This document shows positions 898 to 24,907 of a stretch of 64,000 nt of DNA, piece by piece. The notes below the pieces were generated by a model, which saw only the letters and a program-made list of their open reading frames with translations, was not told the origin of the DNA and searched no databases. The stretch lies in the IMG/VR virus record IMGVR_UViG_3300049001_000044, positions 62,001-126,000 of that record. The stretch is one strand, 5' to 3'. The translations under genes and the position numbers were made by a program. The stretch's first letter is position 1. Each line of letters begins with the position of its first letter.

Positions 898-1027
898 TGG
901 TCGGGAATGATGGAATCGAACCATGGTTTCTTCTGTCCAACCGAAGAGTCCTAACACAAGTCGGTGTGTTACTAACTTGCTGAAAGTATCTTCGGCCAGG
1001 AGCGTTCTGCCATTGAACTAATTCCCG
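898..1027 (-). ncRNA. tRNA-Pro(TGG)-like RNA with ~55-nt structured insertion in the anticodon loop
   Basis: CGGGAAT/ATTCCCG-A-CCA acceptor, D and T arms intact; insert 941-995 closed by CCGAAGA/TCTTCGG. Confidence 0.75.
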
Positions 1028-2237: not shown

Positions 2238-3346
2238 ACCTTCTTCCTTAGTTTTGCGATGAGTTGTTCCATCTCTTTGGCAGGGTCAACCTTACCAGTT
2301 GCTTTGTTGATTGCTGACTTCGTTGCGTTCTTGGAGTCGACGTAGGTCTTAGCATTTTGGTTCACCTTACCGAGGTAGGAATCTAAGTTGCTCTCCAATC
2401 TTTGCATCATGAAGTAGGCACGAATACCATCTGCTAACTCAGCCTCTTTCTTTAATTCTTCAGGGGACATCTTAGACAACCTCAGCAGATATCTCCACAT
2501 CATCAGCTGCTCACCTTCTGCCTGTGATCTAGTCATGCCGCTATACTTGCGATAACCATCAACGAACAATGCCCATTGATACCCGTCATCGCCCTCGTGG
2601 CTCATAGATCTGATTTTTACTCGGTCTATGATGCTCTTTCCGAACTCCTTGTAGAGGGCTTCCTTGCGCTCCTTCTGCCGTTCGTAATTGAGCTTGTTGC
2701 GTGCCTTCTTTTCTTCGGGGTCATTCTTAATGCGGTCACGTTCTACCCGCATCTCATCGTAATACACATGTTCTTCCTTTGCCTCATCAAGCCATTTCTT
2801 CAGCACTTCAATTGGCGCAACAATTGTTGCCGCATTTGATTTAAAAGTGTAGATGTTCTTGATTAGGTGGCCTAACTGATTGTACGCCTTATACTTCTTG
2901 GCAATGGCGGTGCTCACTACCGAATAGACAAGCTTCAGTGCTGGCCCAGTCTTTGTTGCAACATGAATCTTTACCTTACCATCACCGAGGTCTGTGAGTT
3001 GGACATCATCGTACGTGAGCTCAACAGGCTGTTCCCAACCACTCCAATCTGCCGTTGCTTTCTTCGTCTTGAAATGGTTGCCGTGAATGCGCCAGACATC
3101 CATAGGCCAATCCAAATCCATGTCCTTCATGTATTCAACCGCCTCTTGTGGAGTGGTGAACTTCAACTTGCTAGGGTGCGCAGCTTTCAGCTCATTGAAC
3201 TTCGCCTTAGCCTTCTTTTCGGCGGCCTTGACGGCTTCCTTGCTCGGGGCCTTGTCGATATTGGTCAGGTCGAATGAGTGTCCAAAGAAAATCTGTGCCT
3301 TGAATGTTGGCTTTGCGGCTGCTTCAAAGAGCTGAATTAGTTTCAT
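2234..3346 (-). CDS. hypothetical, putative head-packaged protein (MKLIQLFE)
   Basis: Start re-called at ATG after GGAGA RBS. Confidence 0.65.
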   Translation of the reverse strand: MKLIQLFEAAAKPTFKAQIFFGHSFDLTNIDKAPSKEAVKAAEKKAKAKFNELKAAHPSKLKFTTPQEAVEYMKDMDLDWPMDVWRIHGNHFKTKKATADWSGWEQPVELTYDDVQLTDLGDGKVKIHVATKTGPALKLVYSVVSTAIAKKYKAYNQLGHLIKNIYTFKSNAATIVAPIEVLKKWLDEAKEEHVYYDEMRVERDRIKNDPEEKKARNKLNYERQKERKEALYKEFGKSIIDRVKIRSMSHEGDDGYQWALFVDGYRKYSGMTRSQAEGEQLMMWRYLLRLSKMSPEELKKEAELADGIRAYFMMQRLESNLDSYLGKVNQNAKTYVDSKNATKSAINKATGKVDPAKEMEQLIAKLRKKV

Positions 3347-3347
3347 C

Positions 3348-3860
3348 TTATCTCCAAGGGTTGGACTCTGGCTTGATGTTGCCATCCTTGTCGACGCGAT
3401 AGAACGGGCTGTTGTCATCTACGTGGCCTTGCTTGGCGTCATGGACGTGGTCGCCTGCGGTATCATCCCACATGTCTGCGAGATAATCGTAGAAGCCCTT
3501 AGTGCCCTTGTTGAACTTTCTAATGATGCGGTCGATAGCGTCCATGTCGATCTCATACTTGCGCTGGATACGTTCCAACTTGAAGGATGGATCACTACCG
3601 TCAAGTGCTTGAGCTGCAATCATGGAGAGCTCGGTATCGATCTGATACTCCAGCTGTCTCTTAGCTTCTTGGGCCTTAGCACGCTTGTCTTTGCGCTCTT
3701 CGTCAGACATTTTCTGGCGCTTCTTGACAGGTTCATCGTGCGATGCAGCCCATTCTGCGGCGCCCGGGCTAGACATCGACTTGAACCGCTTATATGAACC
3801 GCTCTTGTTTTTGATTTGCACCGAACTCGGTTTGGCCTCGAACAGCTCTGTAACTTTCAT
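3348..3860 (-). CDS. hypothetical, putative head-packaged protein (MKVTELFE)
   Basis: Late-type TAAATA at 3892-3897 upstream. Confidence 0.65.
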   Translation of the reverse strand: MKVTELFEAKPSSVQIKNKSGSYKRFKSMSSPGAAEWAASHDEPVKKRQKMSDEERKDKRAKAQEAKRQLEYQIDTELSMIAAQALDGSDPSFKLERIQRKYEIDMDAIDRIIRKFNKGTKGFYDYLADMWDDTAGDHVHDAKQGHVDDNSPFYRVDKDGNIKPESNPWR

Positions 3861-3950
3861 GGAGAATCTCCAAGTATGGTTATAAAGAAGGTATTTATGT
3901 CCGGGTCCCGAGCATAAGAAAGCCCGCGAGGGTATCACGGGCCAGGATAC

Positions 3951-4460
3951 TTAGCCGCGAACTGCTTCGAAGATTGTCCAACCATCCTCAACACGAGTAT
4001 TCACGATGCGCAGTGAGGTGCCAATTCCCAAAATCCACTCTGCCTCCGCTTCGTACGTCTCAATGAGAGTGTCTCCATCGGACTCTTCGTATTCTTGTGG
4101 ATTCAACTGCTTCATCTTCTTGTGAAGATCGATGGCCCACTTACACAGCGGAAAACCTCGTACGCACTTGACATGAAGGAGGGCTTTAACTTGTCTGCCA
4201 AACCTCTCCGCCACGCACCTGTACTCGGTCAAACTTGTGTAGTGATCCAAGGTGAATCGCACGTTTGACCCAAACTGCAGCAGTTCAGTGATGGCCTTTA
4301 CCTCTTGCTCGTAAAGGCCACGCCAAAGCTGCGTGCCATCTTCACTAAGAAGCCTCAGTGCTTTTTCAACACTTGGGATTGCTTCCCCATGTTTTCCTAT
4401 GTGACCTTTGCTGTGCACCAAATACAACAGGGTCGACTCATCATCATTTGTTATAGTCAT
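3951..4460 (-). CDS. putative ADP-ribosyltransferase (R-S-E clade)
   Basis: LWRGL...YTSLT...EAEWIL motifs; early-type promoter upstream. Confidence 0.6.
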   Translation of the reverse strand: MTITNDDESTLLYLVHSKGHIGKHGEAIPSVEKALRLLSEDGTQLWRGLYEQEVKAITELLQFGSNVRFTLDHYTSLTEYRCVAERFGRQVKALLHVKCVRGFPLCKWAIDLHKKMKQLNPQEYEESDGDTLIETYEAEAEWILGIGTSLRIVNTRVEDGWTIFEAVRG

Positions 4461-4549
4461 CTCGCTCCCTAATTGTTATAAAAGCGCATCACCTCGATGC
4501 AGTTAAATTATAACACAGGTTGTTAAGAGTGCACAAAAATTTTCAAATT

Positions 4550-5797
4550 TTACAATGTGAAACGCGTGATATCCCCATTGATAATTTCTCCCTTGACCCA
4601 CTCACCAAAGGCATTACAGCCTATCAATCTCGTGGGGCCCTGGCGAGAAGCGAGGAGAGACCAGATTTCTCTGAAGAATCCTTCTCCCACCTCTAGTCTT
4701 CTCTTGTAGTAGTTGAGAGGAGAGGCGTAGATGTCTGCAAAGTTTACCACGACGCTGCTTTCAATATCCAAAATTTCCTTGATGAAGTCTTCCAACTCAT
4801 AGGATAGGAAGTCAACTTGCTTATAGATAACTTCCACATCCTTCAACGGCTGCACCACTGCGTACTCATCGCAGTCAAAGTCGCCAACCATGACTGCTTT
4901 TTCGGCTGATGGAAGATCCTTGAAGGTGCTCACCACATCGCCGTATAGTACGCTACTCTCTGCCGAAAATAGCAGGTGTTGGAAGTCAAGTGCCTCTTGC
5001 GAACGGTCCACGACGTAGATTTTCTTTACCTTGTAGTGCTCAGCCAGGATGAGAGGAGATAGTCCGGCGGCGTGCGTGATAAGTACGTCTGCCACACCAT
5101 CAGGGAGGTCAGGTAGCTCCTCACCACTTTCGTGCATGACGACATGTTGGAGTTTAGCAAGCACTTCCTTTTCAAAAATCGATTCAAAGTGCAGCTCGTG
5201 GTAAGGTGTTTTGAATTCGAACAGGAAGGTACCCTCTTCTAGTGGTAGGTTGTAGAACCTACCGTACTTTTTCAACTGTGCATTGATGAGCAGGCCGCCT
5301 CTCGCGGCATCATCCTTGCTAACCATTGCATTTTCGCCGTTCCTTTCCAAGCCATCGCTGACTTCTTTGAAGCCAACACCGATCATCTGCGTACCATTGA
5401 ACTTGGGCGAGTCGCATGCCTTCCATTCGTCGATGTTGAAGAACAAACATGTCTCTTCTAACCGCGCATATTCAACTGTCTTGCTAGCATAGCCGACTAC
5501 CATGTTGTCGCAGTACCGCTCTAAGCGCGCAACACTTTGCTCGTCATAAATGATGTGGTTGGCACTTTGCACAACGAGGTACTTCGTCTCGCACGTCCCA
5601 AGCGCATGGTCCACGCTGTCACGAAGTAGGATGTGTTTGGCATTCAGTTTGTCACGGAAGAATGGGATGAATGCTTTCGCAAAATCCCAATGCCAGTTTG
5701 GTTCGCCATCCTTAGGATTGAGGATGGCGATAGTTAGGTCGTCTCGAATCATTTCAATGTCCTGTAGTCCGGATGGTGCGCACGACAACGTCCCCAT
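4550..5797 (-). CDS. hypothetical late protein, possibly a Rossmann-fold modification enzyme
   Basis: 415-aa ORF; GATAAATA late promoter inside a hairpin upstream. Confidence 0.5.
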   Translation of the reverse strand: MGTLSCAPSGLQDIEMIRDDLTIAILNPKDGEPNWHWDFAKAFIPFFRDKLNAKHILLRDSVDHALGTCETKYLVVQSANHIIYDEQSVARLERYCDNMVVGYASKTVEYARLEETCLFFNIDEWKACDSPKFNGTQMIGVGFKEVSDGLERNGENAMVSKDDAARGGLLINAQLKKYGRFYNLPLEEGTFLFEFKTPYHELHFESIFEKEVLAKLQHVVMHESGEELPDLPDGVADVLITHAAGLSPLILAEHYKVKKIYVVDRSQEALDFQHLLFSAESSVLYGDVVSTFKDLPSAEKAVMVGDFDCDEYAVVQPLKDVEVIYKQVDFLSYELEDFIKEILDIESSVVVNFADIYASPLNYYKRRLEVGEGFFREIWSLLASRQGPTRLIGCNAFGEWVKGEIINGDITRFTL

Positions 5798-14216: not shown

Positions 14217-15731
14217 TTAGGCTTCCGTGTTCTGACGCATTTCGTCCAGGGTGATCTCGTTGTAGAGGTCACCGTAGTGGTAGACGATCTGGTGCAGGTC
14301 TTCCAGGGTGTGGTGCAGGTCACCTTGGTCGATACGGACAGTCTTGATCTCGTTAGTCACGGTATCGCGAACCAGAGTCAGCACACCTTCCTTCGACTTC
14401 TTGCCAGCGTCAGTGACGGGGTCCTTCGCGATGCCGACCCATTCACCATCGACCAGGATCGAAGATGCTTTCTGGGCGAACTTGTACTTGTCGCGATTGA
14501 CTTTCTGCAGCAGTGCACCACCAGAACCGAAGATGATGCAGTCAGCCGAGTAGTTCAAGCCGATGACGATGTTGCCCAGCAGGGTACGGATTGCGGAGTG
14601 ATCCACACCATCGCCTTGGATGATGCCGACGTAGCGGATCTTCTTGTGGCCGGTGCTGGTGTAGTCGAAGCCATAAGCATCTTCCTGCATCTTAAGGATT
14701 TTAGGAACGATTTCCATCATGTCGCCGCTGTCCGGGCGGAAGACCACCTTGATGCCTGATGCCTTGATCAGTTCGACGAATGGAGGAGAGCAGAGTCGAG
14801 CTGCGCAGCGGAAGACATCGCGGCCATCGATGACGAGGGAGAGGATCTTGGCACCCAGCTTCTTCGCCGATGCGATCTGGTGCTCGAGGTAGTGGATTTC
14901 GCCGGCATCGTCCAGGCCGAAGGAACATTCCACACTGTGTTCAGTGGCGTAGACGGAGAAAGCAGCCATGTCGCACTTGTAGAAGTGGTTCGCAGCCAGC
15001 ACACCTTCGATGGTATCAGAACCCATGAAGTTGATGAGGTGAGCAAAGCCACCGATTTCAGCCTGCTCCGCGCAGGTAACACCGCGGCCGCCGAAGTCGT
15101 GGTAGGCGAAGCCGATCATCGACATGTCTGCACCCGACAACTTGTAGTAGTGCTTGATTTCCTGCTTAATGTCGTAGTCATCGGTCGCGATGGTGGTGGG
15201 GTACCAGATACCGCGGAGGATGATGGTCTCGAAGTAAGCGGACATCCAGAACAGGTCTTCGTCCAGGCAGGTGACCGTGTACAGAGCGTTGCCGCCCGGA
15301 ACCTTGGTGCCTTCCTTCGCTGCACGAATGATGAGAGGAGCGTAGCCGTTGTACTTCTCCACCACTTTCTCCCAGTCCTTGCGGGAAACCAGGGAGTAGC
15401 CGAAGTGCTTCAGCGAGAACGCTTCAGCTTCGTCGATGTGGAATTTGGTGATGCGCTGGGTAAAGTAGCGCTTCAGCAGCATCTGCATACCGGCAGGAAC
15501 GATGGTCTCGTCCTTGGATACGCGGGCTTCGCCGTAGCTGGACATGCCCTTGATGCCGGGACGGTACGAGAAGGCGTGTGCACCCTTGTACGAGTCCGAA
15601 CGGAGGATGAGGGAGATGATGAGCCGATCCAGGTAGGTGTACTTCTTGTCCGTGCTGGATGGAGTGAGGTACTTGGAAATGAAGTCGAACTTCTGTACCA
15701 AGCCGATTGCGCTGCTTGCAACTTGAGTCAT
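14217..15731 (-). CDS. nadV: nicotinamide phosphoribosyltransferase (NAMPT)
   Basis: DSYK, HDFGGRG, ATEHS, RPDSGD, IQGDG, FGSGGALLQ, KDPVTD..KKSK. Confidence 0.93.
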   Translation of the reverse strand: MTQVASSAIGLVQKFDFISKYLTPSSTDKKYTYLDRLIISLILRSDSYKGAHAFSYRPGIKGMSSYGEARVSKDETIVPAGMQMLLKRYFTQRITKFHIDEAEAFSLKHFGYSLVSRKDWEKVVEKYNGYAPLIIRAAKEGTKVPGGNALYTVTCLDEDLFWMSAYFETIILRGIWYPTTIATDDYDIKQEIKHYYKLSGADMSMIGFAYHDFGGRGVTCAEQAEIGGFAHLINFMGSDTIEGVLAANHFYKCDMAAFSVYATEHSVECSFGLDDAGEIHYLEHQIASAKKLGAKILSLVIDGRDVFRCAARLCSPPFVELIKASGIKVVFRPDSGDMMEIVPKILKMQEDAYGFDYTSTGHKKIRYVGIIQGDGVDHSAIRTLLGNIVIGLNYSADCIIFGSGGALLQKVNRDKYKFAQKASSILVDGEWVGIAKDPVTDAGKKSKEGVLTLVRDTVTNEIKTVRIDQGDLHHTLEDLHQIVYHYGDLYNEITLDEMRQNTEA

Positions 15732-15810
15732 GATAAAGCTCCTTTATCTAAAATTTGGCTTTGCGTCTATCGCTTTGCCGTGGTCATCAAGAGTTGATAT
15801 TGAAATTGTA

Positions 15811-16395
15811 TTACTTCAAGTACGTTTCAAAAACTGCAGTGTTGAAGTTGAATTCGACAGGATCAACGTAGACGATCTCGATGCCAGAGGCCGTGGCCTT
15901 CTCGATCTCGTCCTTAACTCCGGTGGATTGGTCCCAACCTGGAAGCATGACGACGATCACCTTGTCGCAACGCTTAAGCAGGTTGATGGAGTAGTCGCCC
16001 CAGAAGTTGTAATCGCCCTCCATCCCTGGCGTCAGATGGATGGAGTAATGGTTGAAGAGTGGGCTGACGACGTGTTCGCCCGGATTCTTCATCATGTACA
16101 TCCCGCTGATACCCATGATCGCCGTCATGAGCACTTCCTTGTTCTCGTACTGCGAGTACGGGCCGGCCAGATAAACCAGCTTATGCCTGGGTTTATCCAG
16201 GACTTCGAAGCGAGAAGCGATGTAGGAGATGCCTCGCGCTTCCAGCAGCTCAACAAAGCAAGTGTTGGTGTCACTGGCAACTGTGTAAACCCTGCCAACT
16301 TCCAGCTTGAAGAGCCGGTCGTTTGGGAGCAATTCTTCGCTCTCTCCAGCATCAACGCAACGGAGCTGAGTGCCTGCGTGAATCATTTTCGACAT
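15811..16395 (-). CDS. nucleoside 2-deoxyribosyltransferase-like (DUF1937/DUF4406) protein
   Basis: VYLAGPY...CD.V..LPGW..STGV..E. Confidence 0.7.
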   Translation of the reverse strand: MSKMIHAGTQLRCVDAGESEELLPNDRLFKLEVGRVYTVASDTNTCFVELLEARGISYIASRFEVLDKPRHKLVYLAGPYSQYENKEVLMTAIMGISGMYMMKNPGEHVVSPLFNHYSIHLTPGMEGDYNFWGDYSINLLKRCDKVIVVMLPGWDQSTGVKDEIEKATASGIEIVYVDPVEFNFNTAVFETYLK

Positions 16396-16398
16396 GAT

Positions 16399-16971
16399 TT
16401 AATCCTTTTGACGTGGGAGCAACTTGACGTAAGATGCTCCGAATTCTTTAACCACTGCATCGAAATCCTTTGCAGCTTCTGCGAGGTACTTCTTGTCCAA
16501 GCTGGTGATGCTCATGATTGGGAAGCCATACGCTTCTTCCTTCTCTGCAACTAGCGAGGTTTTGTTGTCCTCGTAAGTCAGGTAGAAAGGGCGGCCTTTC
16601 TCGAAGAATACCAGCACCACGATATCCATCTTGGCGATCTTATCTCGCTCACGCTTGGCATCGAAGGCACGATTGTGGAGATAGGTTCCCATCTGCTTCC
16701 ACCACTGCCGAATGAAGGTATAGTCCACACCCTGCTCCAGCAGATTTTCGGCGGTGTGAGCCAGATCATAGATGGTCAGTGTGTCCATCCCACCAGCAAC
16801 CAGCGTCATGTCGATGCGGTGCTTGTAGAGAAGGTAGGAGAGGAATCGATTCCTTACCGTGAACAGCTGGATTTCCCAGAACTCTTCGTCCTTCTCTTCA
16901 GTGATTCCCAGCGCCTTGATGACCTGTTCCTTGGTGGCCATCGTAGCGAGCATTTGTTGCAGGTCGTTCAT
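16399..16971 (-). CDS. hypothetical protein
   Basis: ORF downstream of promoter 17007-17040. Confidence 0.65.
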   Translation of the reverse strand: MNDLQQMLATMATKEQVIKALGITEEKDEEFWEIQLFTVRNRFLSYLLYKHRIDMTLVAGGMDTLTIYDLAHTAENLLEQGVDYTFIRQWWKQMGTYLHNRAFDAKRERDKIAKMDIVVLVFFEKGRPFYLTYEDNKTSLVAEKEEAYGFPIMSITSLDKKYLAEAAKDFDAVVKEFGASYVKLLPRQKD

Positions 16972-17205
16972 CGTAGTTCCTTCATCGAAAAGCATTCAGA
17001 TGATTCATTGTAATGCTTTTCGATCGCATCAAAAACTGCAGTTACAGGTGCTTTTCACCCACCATGGAAAATTCCTTAGGTGCCCAGAGGCGAGTGAACC
17101 TGGACCGCCTTACAACGACGATCATGCCAGGACTGTCTTGGTGCCACACGAGCAAATCTCGGTAGTCTACAACCCAGTCCCAAAAGTCCTTGAGGGCGGT
17201 CATGG

Positions 17206-18339
17206 TCAGTCCTTGATCAGGCCAACCATCGTGTCGATGATGGCGTGGTGATCTTCGAACCAGTTCTGCGGATTTGCACGTGCTTCCGAGATCGGCAGCC
17301 AGAAGGCCTTCGCGGTTTCGACGATGCCTTCAACCCCGCCAGTATCTTCCAGGGGAGCGAACTGGCCAGCCACTTTCGGCAGCGGCTTGGTATCGTCGAG
17401 GCGGTACAGGAATGCGAAGGTGATGGTGCGACCACGCAGCGAACGATTTGGATCGTCGAAGTATTCGTAATCGACGATCGAACCGCGGAGGATGTCCTCG
17501 GTGATTTCCTTCGCTCGCTTGCCTTCGGCTAGTCGCAGGCCGGTTTCTTCCAGCACTTCGGTGATCGCGGCTTCTTTCACTCGCTGCTTCGGCTTGACGA
17601 AGCCACCAGGCAGGGCCCACAGACCTTTGCCAGGCAATGCGCCGCGTTCGACGACGAGGATGTGGCCAGACTGGATGATGACGGAGTCGGCGGTGACGAA
17701 GGTTGGCGCGTAAGGAGCAAATGCCCAGCGTTCCTTGTATGCCTTGATGAAGTTGTATTCATCACGCAAAACGCCGAGAGTTGGCGTGGTGATGAAGTTG
17801 CGAAGGAAGCGATCGGTTGCTTCAGGAATATCCCGCCACGTCATGTAAGCGCCAGTGAACAGGCGATCGCGGAGAGCTGTGGCGTTGAGGTCTTCGCCGA
17901 CAGGGTGTGGGTCCTTGAAGTCCTTGCCCCATTGAGGGAAGCAGCGGAGGTACCAGGTGCTGTCATCGCGCTCGGAACCGGTCACGAAGATTTCCGGGTT
18001 GTCGAAGCCGAAGTCTCGCACAGCAGCTTGGACATTCTCCTGGACCGATTGGATCCATTTCGCGTCGTTGTACGGCTGATCAGGGAGGGGACGAATTTCG
18101 TAGGAGGTTTCTGCCGTTACTTGCAGATTACCGAGCACCCAGTTCGTGATGATCTGGCGGCGTTCGATGTAGGTGAAGGGGTTCTTGATGTCTCGGGATT
18201 TGTTAGCCGAGCCGACCAGAACTACAACGCCATCGTAATTTTGGAAGGCATTGTTGAGGACGTGAACGTGTCCGTTGTGGAGGGGTTGGAATCGACCGAT
18301 GTAGACGGCCACCCGCTTGCGGGGATTAGTGTTTGCCAT
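17206..18339 (-). CDS. nadM: bifunctional NMN adenylyltransferase / Nudix ADP-ribose hydrolase
   Basis: [10 protein letters not shown]; KNPF; Nudix box LPGG..E..EETG; FEDH. Confidence 0.92.
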
Positions 18340-18399
18340 TTTCGAGCTCCTCGTAGTTGGCGTTGGTTTCCTTGGCGTCTATCGCCTCGGTGAAATTAT

Positions 18400-18639
18400 T
18401 TACTGGTTCTGGCGGTAGATTGATTCAGGAACAGTGGTGTAGACCCAGCCTGGATCGCCATCCTTATAGCAGCCGAAGTCAGTGACTCTTCCCATTGGGG
18501 CATTAATGCTGTTCAACGTGGTTACCGACATGTCATGCTGTTTGCAGTAGGTTTCTGCTCTCACACGATCTTCAGCAGTTCGTCCAGCGCAGCCCACCAG
18601 GGAGAGGGTAAGCACCATCATCAGAATTTTCTTCATCAT
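18400..18639 (-). CDS. putative lipoprotein
   Basis: Signal peptide with LVGC lipobox. Confidence 0.7.
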   Translation of the reverse strand: MMKKILMMVLTLSLVGCAGRTAEDRVRAETYCKQHDMSVTTLNSINAPMGRVTDFGCYKDGDPGWVYTTVPESIYRQNQ

Positions 18640-24790: not shown

Positions 24791-24907
24791 GATAATGTTG
24801 GTAGGATTCGAACCTACACTTGCAGTCATTTGATGAACAGTTGGGGTGTTTATTCCCTCTCCCAGTCTTAGTGGGACGCCTTGACCAATTTGGCGTTCAA
24901 CATTATC
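24791..24907 (-). ncRNA. tRNA-Leu(AAG)-like RNA with oversized variable region, no CCA
   Basis: 10-bp closing stem GATAATGTTG/CAACATTATC; D arm; TCCCA-CTAAGAC-TGGGA; GTAGG-TTCGAAT-CCTAC. Confidence 0.65.

What the first reader, a model, noticed from the sequence alone, without database searches (positions are those of the whole stretch)
15732..18390. Shared structured 5'-UTR motif on both NAD-salvage genes
Seen on the minus strand: upstream of NAMPT, GGC-AAA-GCG-ATAGA-CGC-AAA-GCC (15779-15757) then the RBS hairpin GATAAAG-GAG-CTTTATC directly before ATG. Upstream of NadM, CC-GA-GGCG-ATAGA-CGCC-AA-GG (18390-18370) then CGAG-GAG-CTCG. Both have the identical 11-mer GCGATAGACGC, a purine-rich internal loop, and the Shine-Dalgarno presented in a GAG-triloop hairpin with different stem sequences (covariation-like). 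Inference: a translational operator or metabolite-responsive RNA coupling NAD-salvage expression to NAD/ADP-ribose status.
Basis: partly seen in the sequence, partly recalled or inferred. Interest (0 to 1): 0.7.

Follow-up and report, generated by a model that had tools for sequence, protein, structure and literature searches.

The report
Conserved RNA leader on NAD-salvage genes
Both NAD-salvage genes of this 343-kb soil phage carry the same small two-hairpin RNA leader, which also precedes the same two genes in hundreds of other phages and many bacteria and is not in Rfam or the searched literature, so it looks like an undescribed control element for rebuilding NAD.

Summary
On the minus strand, 32-38 nt upstream of the NAMPT start (15731) and the NadM-Nudix start (18339), there are two hairpins. 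P1 has the loop AUAGA closed by G-C. P2 holds the Shine-Dalgarno sequence in its loop and ends at the AUG.

A covariance model finds only these two sites in the whole 343-kb phage (E 7.6e-7 and 3.6e-4). The same motif precedes nadM and/or nadV in these sets:
- 51 of 80 viral NadM loci and 65 of 80 viral NAMPT loci
- cultured phages RcXuper, LucasX and B23
- bacteria including Thiothrix, Burkholderia, Achromobacter, Cellvibrio and Caulobacter

All 237 hits in the three locus sets lie on the gene strand. Genomes of 2-5 Mb or 290-455 kb hold only 1-3 copies, all at NAD-salvage genes. The stems covary heavily; only the loop A-N-A-G-A and its closing G-C pair are fixed. The 11-mer and the purine-rich internal loop are features of this lineage only.

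Rfam 15 has no such family and no paper was found. The motif is not an NrtR operator.

The most likely function is a translational operator: P2 occludes the ribosome-binding site and the P1 loop docks a trans-acting factor. Whether that factor is a protein or a metabolite is unresolved.

The parts
15805..15838 (-). Phage promoter-like element TGCAGTTTTTGA-N-TACAAT upstream of the NAMPT leader. The inferred transcription start is about 15798-15800, roughly 20 nt before P1.
   Evidence: Sequence. Eight copies of TGCAGTTTTT..TA[ACT]AAT lie on the minus strand of the genome between 48 and 99 kb. The function is inferred.
15757..15779 (-). NAMPT leader hairpin P1: GGC/GCC outer stem, AAA/AAA internal loop, GCG/CGC inner stem, loop AUAGA at 15770-15766.
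   Evidence: Part of the covariance-model hit at window 15729-15784, 44.9 bits, E 7.6e-7.
15749..15756 (-). G-free linker AAAUUUUA between P1 and P2.
   Evidence: The linker is G-poor across the family, with 2-8% G per column.
15732..15748 (-). NAMPT leader hairpin P2: GAUAAAG-GAG-CUUUAUC. The Shine-Dalgarno sequence AAGGAG lies half in the stem and half in the triloop, and the stem abuts the AUG at 15731-15729.
   Evidence: A P2 hairpin is present in all 113 aligned leaders and covaries.
14217..15731 (-). Nicotinamide phosphoribosyltransferase gene (NAMPT/NadV), 504 aa.
   Evidence: Pfam NAPRTase 4.3e-34 and NAMPT_N 1.3e-15.
18370..18390 (-). NadM leader hairpin P1: CC/GG outer stem, GA/AA internal loop, GGCG/CGCC inner stem, loop AUAGA at 18382-18378. 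It begins 9 nt after the stop codon of the upstream 79-aa ORF. A TAAATAAT -10-like sequence lies just before it.
   Evidence: Part of the covariance-model hit at window 18338-18396, 32.9 bits, E 3.6e-4.
18354..18369 (-). A/C-rich linker AAACCAACGCCAACUA.
18343..18353 (-). NadM leader hairpin P2: CGAG-GAG-CUCG, with the Shine-Dalgarno sequence in it. RNAfold extends it by GCCA/UGGC pairing that also covers the AUG at 18339-18337.
17206..18339 (-). Bifunctional NMN adenylyltransferase / Nudix (ADP-ribose pyrophosphatase type) gene, NadM-Nudix, 377 aa.
   Evidence: Pfam CTP_transf_like 1.5e-11 and NUDIX 2.3e-12. tblastn matches phage proteins annotated as bifunctional NMNAT/Nudix.

Best explanation
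This is an undescribed cis-regulatory RNA leader dedicated to the nadM/nadV NAD-salvage pair. In phages this pair is the NARP2 NAD-reconstitution pathway.

Anatomy, 5' to 3':
- P1 is a hairpin with a freely covarying stem of 4-11 bp and an invariant pentaloop A-N-A-G-A on a G-C closing pair.
- The linker is G-poor and unstructured, usually 5-20 nt.
- P2 is a hairpin that holds the Shine-Dalgarno sequence in or around its loop. Its 3' arm is the SD-AUG spacer, and it ends at the start codon.

P1 often starts at or within a few nucleotides of the inferred transcription start. Each regulated cistron carries its own copy.

Proposed mechanism (inferred): P2 keeps the ribosome-binding site closed and must melt for the 30S subunit to bind. 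The P1 loop sits about 32 nt upstream of the AUG, at the edge of the 30S footprint. It is the specific docking site for a trans-acting factor that sets how often the site opens, which ties synthesis of both enzymes to one signal.

Only a 5-nt loop is conserved, and the two hairpins show no alternative pairing. I therefore think the factor is more likely a protein than a small molecule. The simplest candidate is a product of the regulon itself, NadM-Nudix, whose NMNAT and Nudix domains bind NAD, NMN, ATP and ADP-ribose. This would be autogenous translational control in the manner of thrS or the MS2 operator.

Shown: the motif, its structure, its strand, its specificity for these genes and its spread. 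Inferred: the level of control, the direction of control and the identity of the factor.
For: Existence and specificity:
- The model finds only two hits in the own 343-kb genome.
- Five complete jumbo-phage contigs of 290-455 kb hold 1-3 significant hits each, all inside the NAD-salvage locus.
- In the order of Thiothrix, 33 of 61 genomes have hits, 1-3 per genome. In each of the 30 loci inspected the motif precedes nadM and/or nadV, and both in 26 of them.
- In Cellvibrio, nadM and nadV are 6.8 kb apart or on different contigs, and both still carry the motif.

Prevalence:
- 51 of 80 viral NadM loci, 65 of 80 viral NAMPT loci and many bacterial NAMPT loci carry it.
- All 83 + 98 + 56 hits lie on the gene strand.

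RNA structure:
- P1 and P2 pair in about 80% of cells, against 30-42% for slid registers. The covariation score is 0.67 against 0.20 for shuffles, with 0 of 500 shuffles reaching it.
- Outer P1 pairs, which were not used to select sequences, show 4-6 pair types each.
- G-U pairs exceed A-C pairs on the sense strand: 27 against 5 at the third P1 pair in a set chosen without any pairing rule, and 117 against 36 in P2.

Translation-level anatomy:
- All 113 leaders have a P2 of at least 4 bp around the Shine-Dalgarno sequence. In 108 of them it ends within -3 to +3 nt of the AUG.
- The distance from the loop to the AUG is 29-40 nt in 111 of the 113, with a mode of 32-33.
- The linker is G-poor.
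- A -10-like hexamer ends 17 nt before the loop in 19 of 52 phage NAMPT leaders, which puts P1 at the 5' end of the transcript.

Only the loop is conserved: A 100%, U 91%, A 100%, G 100%, A 100%, closing G-C 96%. True P1-P2 pairs show no more complementarity than mismatched pairs.
Against: - No experiment and no RNA data exist for any member. The window comes from a soil DNA metagenome.
- NadM as the factor rests only on co-occurrence, and that is confounded because nadM is itself a target gene.
- A relative of this phage (L006) carries an intact nadM that has lost the leader through a homing-endonuclease insertion. The leader is therefore dispensable for nadM there.
- About a fifth to a third of phage nadV and nadM loci, and many bacterial ones such as Variovorax and Luteibacter, lack the motif.
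- Small riboswitches with only loop nucleotides conserved do exist (guanidine-II, from my own knowledge), so a metabolite sensor is not excluded.
- P2 is weak (about -3 kcal/mol) in AT-rich phages.
Confidence: 0.55

Rival explanations
1. The motif is a direct metabolite sensor, a third riboswitch class for the NAD family. The P1 loop, perhaps together with the linker or the P2 loop, would bind NAD+, NMN, nicotinamide, ADP-ribose or PRPP. Binding would change how accessible the Shine-Dalgarno sequence in P2 is.
For: - The gene association is exclusive to NAD salvage in very distant bacteria and phages, which favours a universal ligand over a host-specific protein.
- The SD-sequestering hairpin resembles a translational expression platform.
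- Both known NAD+ riboswitch classes control NAD genes in this way (PMC8632094).
- From my own knowledge, guanidine-II shows that hairpins with only their loops conserved can be riboswitches.
Against: - Only 5 loop nucleotides plus one base pair are conserved, which is very little to build a pocket for a dinucleotide.
- The internal loop of P1 is not conserved.
- P1 and P2 show no mutually exclusive pairing and no loop-to-downstream complementarity above background.
- The linker length varies from 5 to 20 nt.
- Single copies occur, so loop-loop dimerisation of two copies cannot be required.
Confidence: 0.2
2. The motif is a constitutive structural element with no sensing role. P1 would be a 5'-terminal stabiliser hairpin that protects against 5'-end-dependent decay. 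P2 would simply tune translation, or set the ratio of the two enzymes, by a fixed amount.
For: - P1 often starts at the inferred transcription start.
- P2 energies are modest, averaging -3.6 kcal/mol against -2.5 for control ribosome-binding sites.
- No alternative structures were found.
Against: - A pure stabiliser has no need for an invariant asymmetric loop kept from cyanophages to Burkholderia.
- It would not be restricted to one regulon, with 1-3 copies per genome.
- Many copies are intercistronic. In some the nadM stop codon lies inside P1, for example L032, L045 and L078.
Confidence: 0.15
3. The motif is a DNA operator. The inverted repeat around ATAGA would be bound by a transcription factor such as NrtR, at or just after the promoter.
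For: - P1 lies at about +1 to +25 of the inferred promoters, a classic operator position.
- An nrtR gene is divergent from nadM in Cellvibrio.
Against: - The arms covary without any sequence conservation, and the conserved centre is asymmetric. This is the reverse of a palindromic operator.
- NrtR sites are 21-bp palindromes with a GT-N7-AC core (PMC2330246), which P1 lacks.
- G-U pairs are tolerated and A-C pairs are not.
- All 237 hits in the locus sets lie on the gene strand.
- The motif is coupled to an SD hairpin at a fixed distance from the AUG, and it occurs between cistrons.
Confidence: 0.03

Closest known systems
NAD+-I (nadA motif) and NAD+-II (pnuC motif) riboswitches
   Same: They are cis-acting leaders of NAD-metabolism genes and control translation by hiding the ribosome-binding site (PMC8632094).
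   Different: - There is no sequence or structure match. Rfam 15 gives no hit, even at E up to 10, on four representative leaders.
- Those aptamers keep their conserved nucleotides in internal bulges, and NAD+-II also uses a pseudoknot with the ribosome-binding site. Here only a pentaloop is conserved and no pseudoknot potential was found.
- The genes differ (nadA and pnuC against nadM and nadV), and so do the taxa (Acidobacteria and Streptococcus against Proteobacteria and phages).
NrtR operators (Nudix-related transcriptional regulator of NAD genes)
   Same: They control the same genes, nadV, nadM and prs, in Proteobacteria and cyanobacteria and respond to ADP-ribose (PMC2330246). In Cellvibrio, nrtR sits next to a nadM that carries the motif.
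   Different: NrtR sites are 21-bp DNA palindromes with conserved arms (GT-N7-AC). This motif has variable, covarying arms and an asymmetric conserved centre, is strand-specific and is linked to the Shine-Dalgarno sequence and the AUG. It is a second, separate layer of control.
Guanidine-II (mini-ykkC) riboswitch
   Same: The architecture is similar (from my own knowledge): small hairpins whose stems covary freely, with only the loop and the closing pair conserved, and a ribosome-binding site in or next to the second hairpin.
   Different: Guanidine-II has two like hairpins with ACGR tetraloops that kiss. Here the two loops differ (AUAGA and GGAG), are not complementary, and the ligand class would be far larger.
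Protein-bound translational operators (thrS operator, MS2/R17 coat-protein hairpin, T4 gene 32 and 43 operators)
   Same: From my own knowledge, these are short hairpins at or just upstream of the ribosome-binding site. They are recognised through a few loop bases by the gene's own product or a partner, which competes with the 30S subunit.
   Different: No binding protein is known here. The two-hairpin layout, with an upstream recognition loop and a separate SD hairpin, and the loop sequence are new.

Membership tests
NAD+-I riboswitch (nadA motif, Rfam) | Match to the covariance model: tandem stem / internal bulge / stem domains with conserved bulge nucleotides. | tested here: not met
   Rfam 15 at gathering threshold on the whole window found only tRNAs. 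Permissive scans at E up to 10 of the NAMPT leader, a Thiothrix leader and an AT-rich phage leader gave no NAD riboswitch hit.
NAD+-II riboswitch (pnuC motif, Rfam) | Conserved internal bulge between two stems, plus a pseudoknot with the ribosome-binding site. | tested here: not met
   No Rfam hit. The internal loop is not conserved. The P1 loop and arms show no complementarity to the P2/RBS region above mismatched controls.
NrtR operator | 21-bp DNA palindrome with conserved arms and core GT-N7-AC (PMC2330246). | tested here: not met
   The arms vary and covary, the conserved part is the asymmetric centre ATAGA, and there is no GT-N7-AC. In the three locus sets every hit lies on the gene strand.
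Guanidine-II (mini-ykkC) type hairpin-pair riboswitch | Two hairpins with identical ACGR tetraloops capable of loop-loop pairing. | tested here: not met
   The loops are AUAGA and GGAG/GGAU, are not complementary, and single copies occur.
CsrA/RsmA binding site | GGA in the loop of a short hairpin that overlaps the Shine-Dalgarno sequence, usually with a second GGA site upstream. | tested here: inconclusive
   P2 fits this description, with GGA in the loop over the Shine-Dalgarno sequence. P1 has AGA, not GGA, and the motif also occurs in Alpha- and Betaproteobacteria and in phages. Whether csrA is present in those genomes was not checked.
Generic cis-regulatory structured mRNA leader (translational operator) | Conserved structure with covariation, fixed orientation and position relative to the start codon, and restriction to a functionally coherent gene set. 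| tested here: met
   Covariation. Position and orientation. Restriction to the regulon.
Generic cis-regulatory structured mRNA leader (translational operator) | A demonstrated effect on expression and an identified effector. | not testable with these tools
   No RNA-seq run holds the sequence. The protein-RNA co-fold was not run by the tool.

The most novel reading that the evidence does not exclude
The leader is a new, minimal riboswitch class, a third one for the NAD family. It would sense NAD+ or a breakdown or precursor product such as ADP-ribose, nicotinamide or NMN. Phages would have captured it together with nadM and nadV, so that their NAD-reconstitution counter-defence is translated when a host defence system depletes NAD+.
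Probability: 0.2. Interest if true: 0.9.

Novelty: new variant of a known kind. Interest (0 to 1): 0.78.

Why it matters
NAMPT plus NadM-Nudix is the NARP2 pathway, by which phages rebuild NAD+ after defence systems destroy it (bioRxiv 10.1101/2024.02.11.579819, listed). In bacteria the same pair is the type II nicotinamide salvage route. Until now its known control was transcriptional, through NrtR.

A dedicated RNA leader conserved from cyanophages and jumbo phages to Burkholderia and Thiothrix has four consequences:
- It adds a post-transcriptional layer to NAD homeostasis.
- It suggests that phage NAD reconstitution is regulated rather than constitutive.
- It gives RNA biologists a new orphan motif with a very clear gene association and tractable hosts: Xanthomonas phage LucasX, Rhodobacter phage RcXuper, Synechococcus phage B23 and Burkholderia.
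- It marks a regulon. Unknown small phage genes and an SPFH/flotillin gene carry the same leader, so they are candidates for new NAD-linked functions.

Tried and rejected
- Pattern scan of viral contigs with GCGATAGACGCNAAG. Most of the 120 stretches were chance matches inside ORFs. About 14 were real and opened the family.
- Close DNA relatives among cultured phages. None was found. The nearest cultured relatives, RsoM2USA and XacN1 (under 40% amino-acid identity), lack the AUAGA hairpin. Both still have an SD-containing hairpin before NAMPT.
- A pseudoknot between the AUAGA loop and the 3' arm of P2 or the start region. By eye this is possible in some leaders, including the window's NAMPT leader, but it is not above mismatched controls. 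Rejected.
- Mutually exclusive pairing between P1 arms and P2. Not detected.
- G-U against A-C counts in the outer P1 pairs. The result was 25 against 34, inconclusive because A-rich internal loops fall there. The test was informative only at the inner pairs and in P2.
- Complex prediction with two copies of NadM plus the leader RNA. The tool did not fold it, so it gives no evidence.
- Sequencing runs. Only soil DNA metagenomes hold the sequence, so transcription starts could not be read.
- An even sample of 151 genomes of the class. Only 4 had hits, under strict filters, so the motif is patchy and follows nadM-nadV. A third hit in G037 is a terminator-like hairpin with an ATAGA loop, and the G216 hits are an unrelated inverted repeat.
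- The idea that P1/P2 is a general phage promoter or ribosome-binding-site feature. Rejected from whole-genome scans.
- The sigma-70 consensus scan did not see the phage's own promoter-like motif.
- Literature searches for nadV or nadM with riboswitch, motif or leader, for NARP2 with stem-loop, and for an AUAGA loop. Nothing relevant was found.
Full report
**Context.** The window is bases 62001-126000 of a 343,229-bp IMG/VR phage genome with direct terminal repeats. It was assembled from a soil metagenome. The nearest cultured phages, Ralstonia RsoM2USA and Xanthomonas XacN1, share under 40% protein identity. The minus strand carries these genes:
- NAMPT, 14217-15731
- a nucleoside 2-deoxyribosyltransferase-like DUF1937 gene, 15811-16395
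- two unknown ORFs
- NadM-Nudix, 17206-18339
- a 79-aa lipoprotein-like ORF, 18400-18639

**Checking the observation.**
- The NAMPT leader has P1 at 15779-15757 with loop AUAGA, then 8 nt of linker, then P2 GAUAAAG-GAG-CUUUAUC at 15748-15732, then the AUG.
- The NadM leader has P1 at 18390-18370, then 16 nt of linker, then P2 CGAG-GAG-CUCG at 18353-18343, then AAA and the AUG.

The 11-mer GCGATAGACGC occurs only at these two places in the 343-kb genome. A scan for hairpins with an ATAGA loop across the genome found no other site followed by an SD hairpin and a gene. RNAfold returns both hairpins as the minimum-free-energy structure.

**Finding the family.** A scan of viral contigs with GCGATAGACGCNAAG gave mostly chance matches. 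About 14 hits, however, sat 25-45 nt upstream of ORFs beginning like NadM (..IGRFQP..) or NAMPT (..TDSYK..) in unrelated contigs. Each was followed by an SD hairpin with a different stem.

To remove the bias of that pattern, I fetched loci by protein similarity only:
- 80 viral NadM loci
- 80 viral NAMPT loci
- 80 NAMPT loci from bacterial genomes

Relaxed searches showed that the stem next to the loop changes freely. Observed forms include GCG/CGC, GAG/CUC, GGG/CCC, ACG/CGU, GUG/CAC, UCG/CGA and GCA/UGC. The loop ATAGA stays fixed.

I aligned 113 non-identical leaders (A3). On this alignment P1 and P2 pair in about 80% of cells, against 30-42% for slid registers. The covariation score is 0.67 against 0.20 for shuffles, and none of 500 shuffles reached it. 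All 13 pairs show changes on both sides.

There is a caveat. The three pairs nearest the loop were part of my selection rule. The outer P1 pairs and P2 were not. In a set taken without any pairing rule, 76 of 118 ATAGA sites near the starts have all three inner pairs. At the third pair, G-U outnumbers A-C by 27 to 5. In P2, G-U outnumbers A-C by 117 to 36. This is what an RNA helix on the sense strand predicts.

**Anatomy of the family.**
- Loop: A 100%, U 91%, A 100%, G 100%, A 100%. The closing G-C pair is present in 96%. Burkholderia and a few others use AAAGA or ACAGA.
- P1 stem: 4-11 bp. It is interrupted by an A-rich internal loop in some lineages, including this phage, and continuous in most others.
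- Linker: G-poor, 2-8% G per column.
- P2: at least 4 bp in all 113 leaders, with a loop of 3 or 5 nt around GGAG or GGA. Its 3' end lies -3 to +3 nt from the A of the AUG in 108 of the 113.
- Spacing: 29-40 nt from the loop to the AUG in 111 of the 113, with a mode of 32-33.
- Position in the transcript: in phage NAMPT leaders a TTGAnA...TGnTATAcT promoter consensus ends 17 nt before the loop, so P1 starts at about +1. In this window a phage-specific promoter-like motif at 15838-15805 puts the start about 20 nt before P1.

**Specificity.**
- Model R1 finds only the two leaders in the own genome.
- In five complete jumbo-phage contigs, every significant hit (1-3 per contig) falls in the nadM-nadV locus.
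- Model R2, which includes bacterial members, hits 51 of 80 viral NadM loci with 83 hits and 65 of 80 viral NAMPT loci with 98 hits.
- The bacterial loci gave 56 hits with R1.
- All 237 of these hits are on the gene strand.
- In the order that holds Thiothrix, 33 of 61 genomes have 1-3 hits per 2-5 Mb. These are typically two hits about 1.1 kb apart, one before nadM and one before nadV.
- In Cellvibrio the two genes are unlinked and both keep the motif.
- An even sample of the class gave few hits, so the distribution is patchy.
- Among bacterial loci, the motif goes with the nadM-nadV arrangement. NAMPT genes with no nadM in the flanks mostly lack it.
- Cultured carriers are Rhodobacter phage RcXuper, Xanthomonas phage LucasX and Synechococcus phage B23, each with the motif on both genes. 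Ralstonia RSP15 has a weak hit. Eleven other cultured phages lack it.

**Other genes with the leader.**
- Small unknown phage genes next to nadM or nadV carry it: phrog_33851, 12218, 37251 and 7661.
- An SPFH/Band-7 gene after nadV in Dasania carries it, and a remnant of that gene is present in Halioxenophilus.

**What it is not.**
- Rfam 15 has no matching family.
- NrtR operators are 21-bp palindromes with a GT-N7-AC core (PMC2330246). Here the arms vary and the centre is conserved and asymmetric. In Cellvibrio an nrtR gene is divergent from a motif-bearing nadM, so the two controls coexist.
- No paper in the library describes the motif.

**How it most likely works.** P2 uses the SD-AUG spacer as its 3' arm, so it must open before the 30S subunit can bind. 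In GC-rich bacteria P2 is long, for example CAGUAAG-GAG-CUUACUG and GACGNGAAG-GAG-CUUCNGUC. Each cistron has its own copy. Together these features point to control of translation initiation.

The only sequence-specific element is a 5-nt loop about 32 nt upstream of the AUG. P1 and P2 show no alternative pairing. This is the signature of an operator read by a trans-acting factor rather than of a conformational switch. I favour a protein, with NadM-Nudix as the first candidate. It is always present with the motif, and it binds NAD, NMN, ATP and ADP-ribose. It also combines the two domain types that NadR and NrtR use as NAD sensors (NadR from my own knowledge, NrtR from PMC2330246).

This is inference, and nothing here tests binding. 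A minimal riboswitch remains possible at about 0.2, and a non-sensing structural element at about 0.15.

One natural variant argues that the leader is not essential. In the relative L006 a GIY-YIG-like homing endonuclease has split nadM, and the intact downstream copy has a new start without the leader.

**Verdict.** The feature is a real, widespread and apparently undescribed regulatory RNA motif for NAD salvage and NARP2 genes, and its effector is unknown.

Noticed in passing
window minus strand; TGCAG starts at 1088, 14204, 15838, 17040, 18950, 25594 and 36850: A phage-specific promoter-like motif, TGCAGTTTTTG-N14-16-TA[ACT]AAT, occurs 8 times on the minus strand of the genome between 48 and 99 kb. 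The nonamer TGCAGTTTT occurs 14 times in all, against about 2.6 expected by chance. The motif probably marks one temporal class of promoters, and the sigma-70 consensus scan missed it.
   Followed up: partly
L006:2884-4916 (IMGVR_UViG_3300012212_000040, 90% NAMPT identity to the window): nadM is split by a 285-aa GIY-YIG/NUMOD-like homing-endonuclease ORF (2984-3841), inserted right after the conserved YIGRFQPL motif. The leader now precedes a 46-aa N-terminal remnant. The intact nadM (3792-4916) has a duplicated N-terminus, a new start and no leader.
   Followed up: partly
L178:2072-2443, L187:2072-2446, L191:2649-2972, L204:2461-2814, L152:2567-3022, L154:2273-2977, L241:581-1045: Small phage genes of unknown function (phrog_33851, 12218, 37251 and 7661, and one with no family) next to nadM or nadV carry the same leader. 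They are candidates for new NAD-linked or counter-defence functions.
   Followed up: partly
L365:4546-5649 (Dasania), L345:4425-4560 (Halioxenophilus), L444:1604-2992 (Brevundimonas phage Kabachok): An SPFH/Band-7 (flotillin-like) gene is linked to nadM-nadV in both bacteria and a phage. In Dasania it has its own copy of the leader. In Halioxenophilus only a 27-aa remnant follows the leader.
   Followed up: partly
window 901-1027 and 24793-24904 (minus strand): Two Rfam tRNA matches span 127 and 112 nt, much longer than a tRNA. They may be intron-containing or otherwise interrupted tRNA genes. Three normal tRNAs lie at 84-319.
   Followed up: no
window 15811-16395 (minus strand): A DUF1937 / nucleoside 2-deoxyribosyltransferase-like gene sits between nadM and NAMPT and is conserved in L006. 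It has no leader of its own, and a link to nicotinamide or nucleoside exchange is conceivable.
   Followed up: no
L127:2170-2230 (RsoM2USA) and L128:2230-2260 (XacN1), minus strand: The distant cultured relatives lack the AUAGA hairpin but still have an SD-containing hairpin directly before the NAMPT start, for example UUGAAA-GGAGU-UUUCAA in RsoM2USA. P2 may therefore be older or more widespread than P1.
   Followed up: partly
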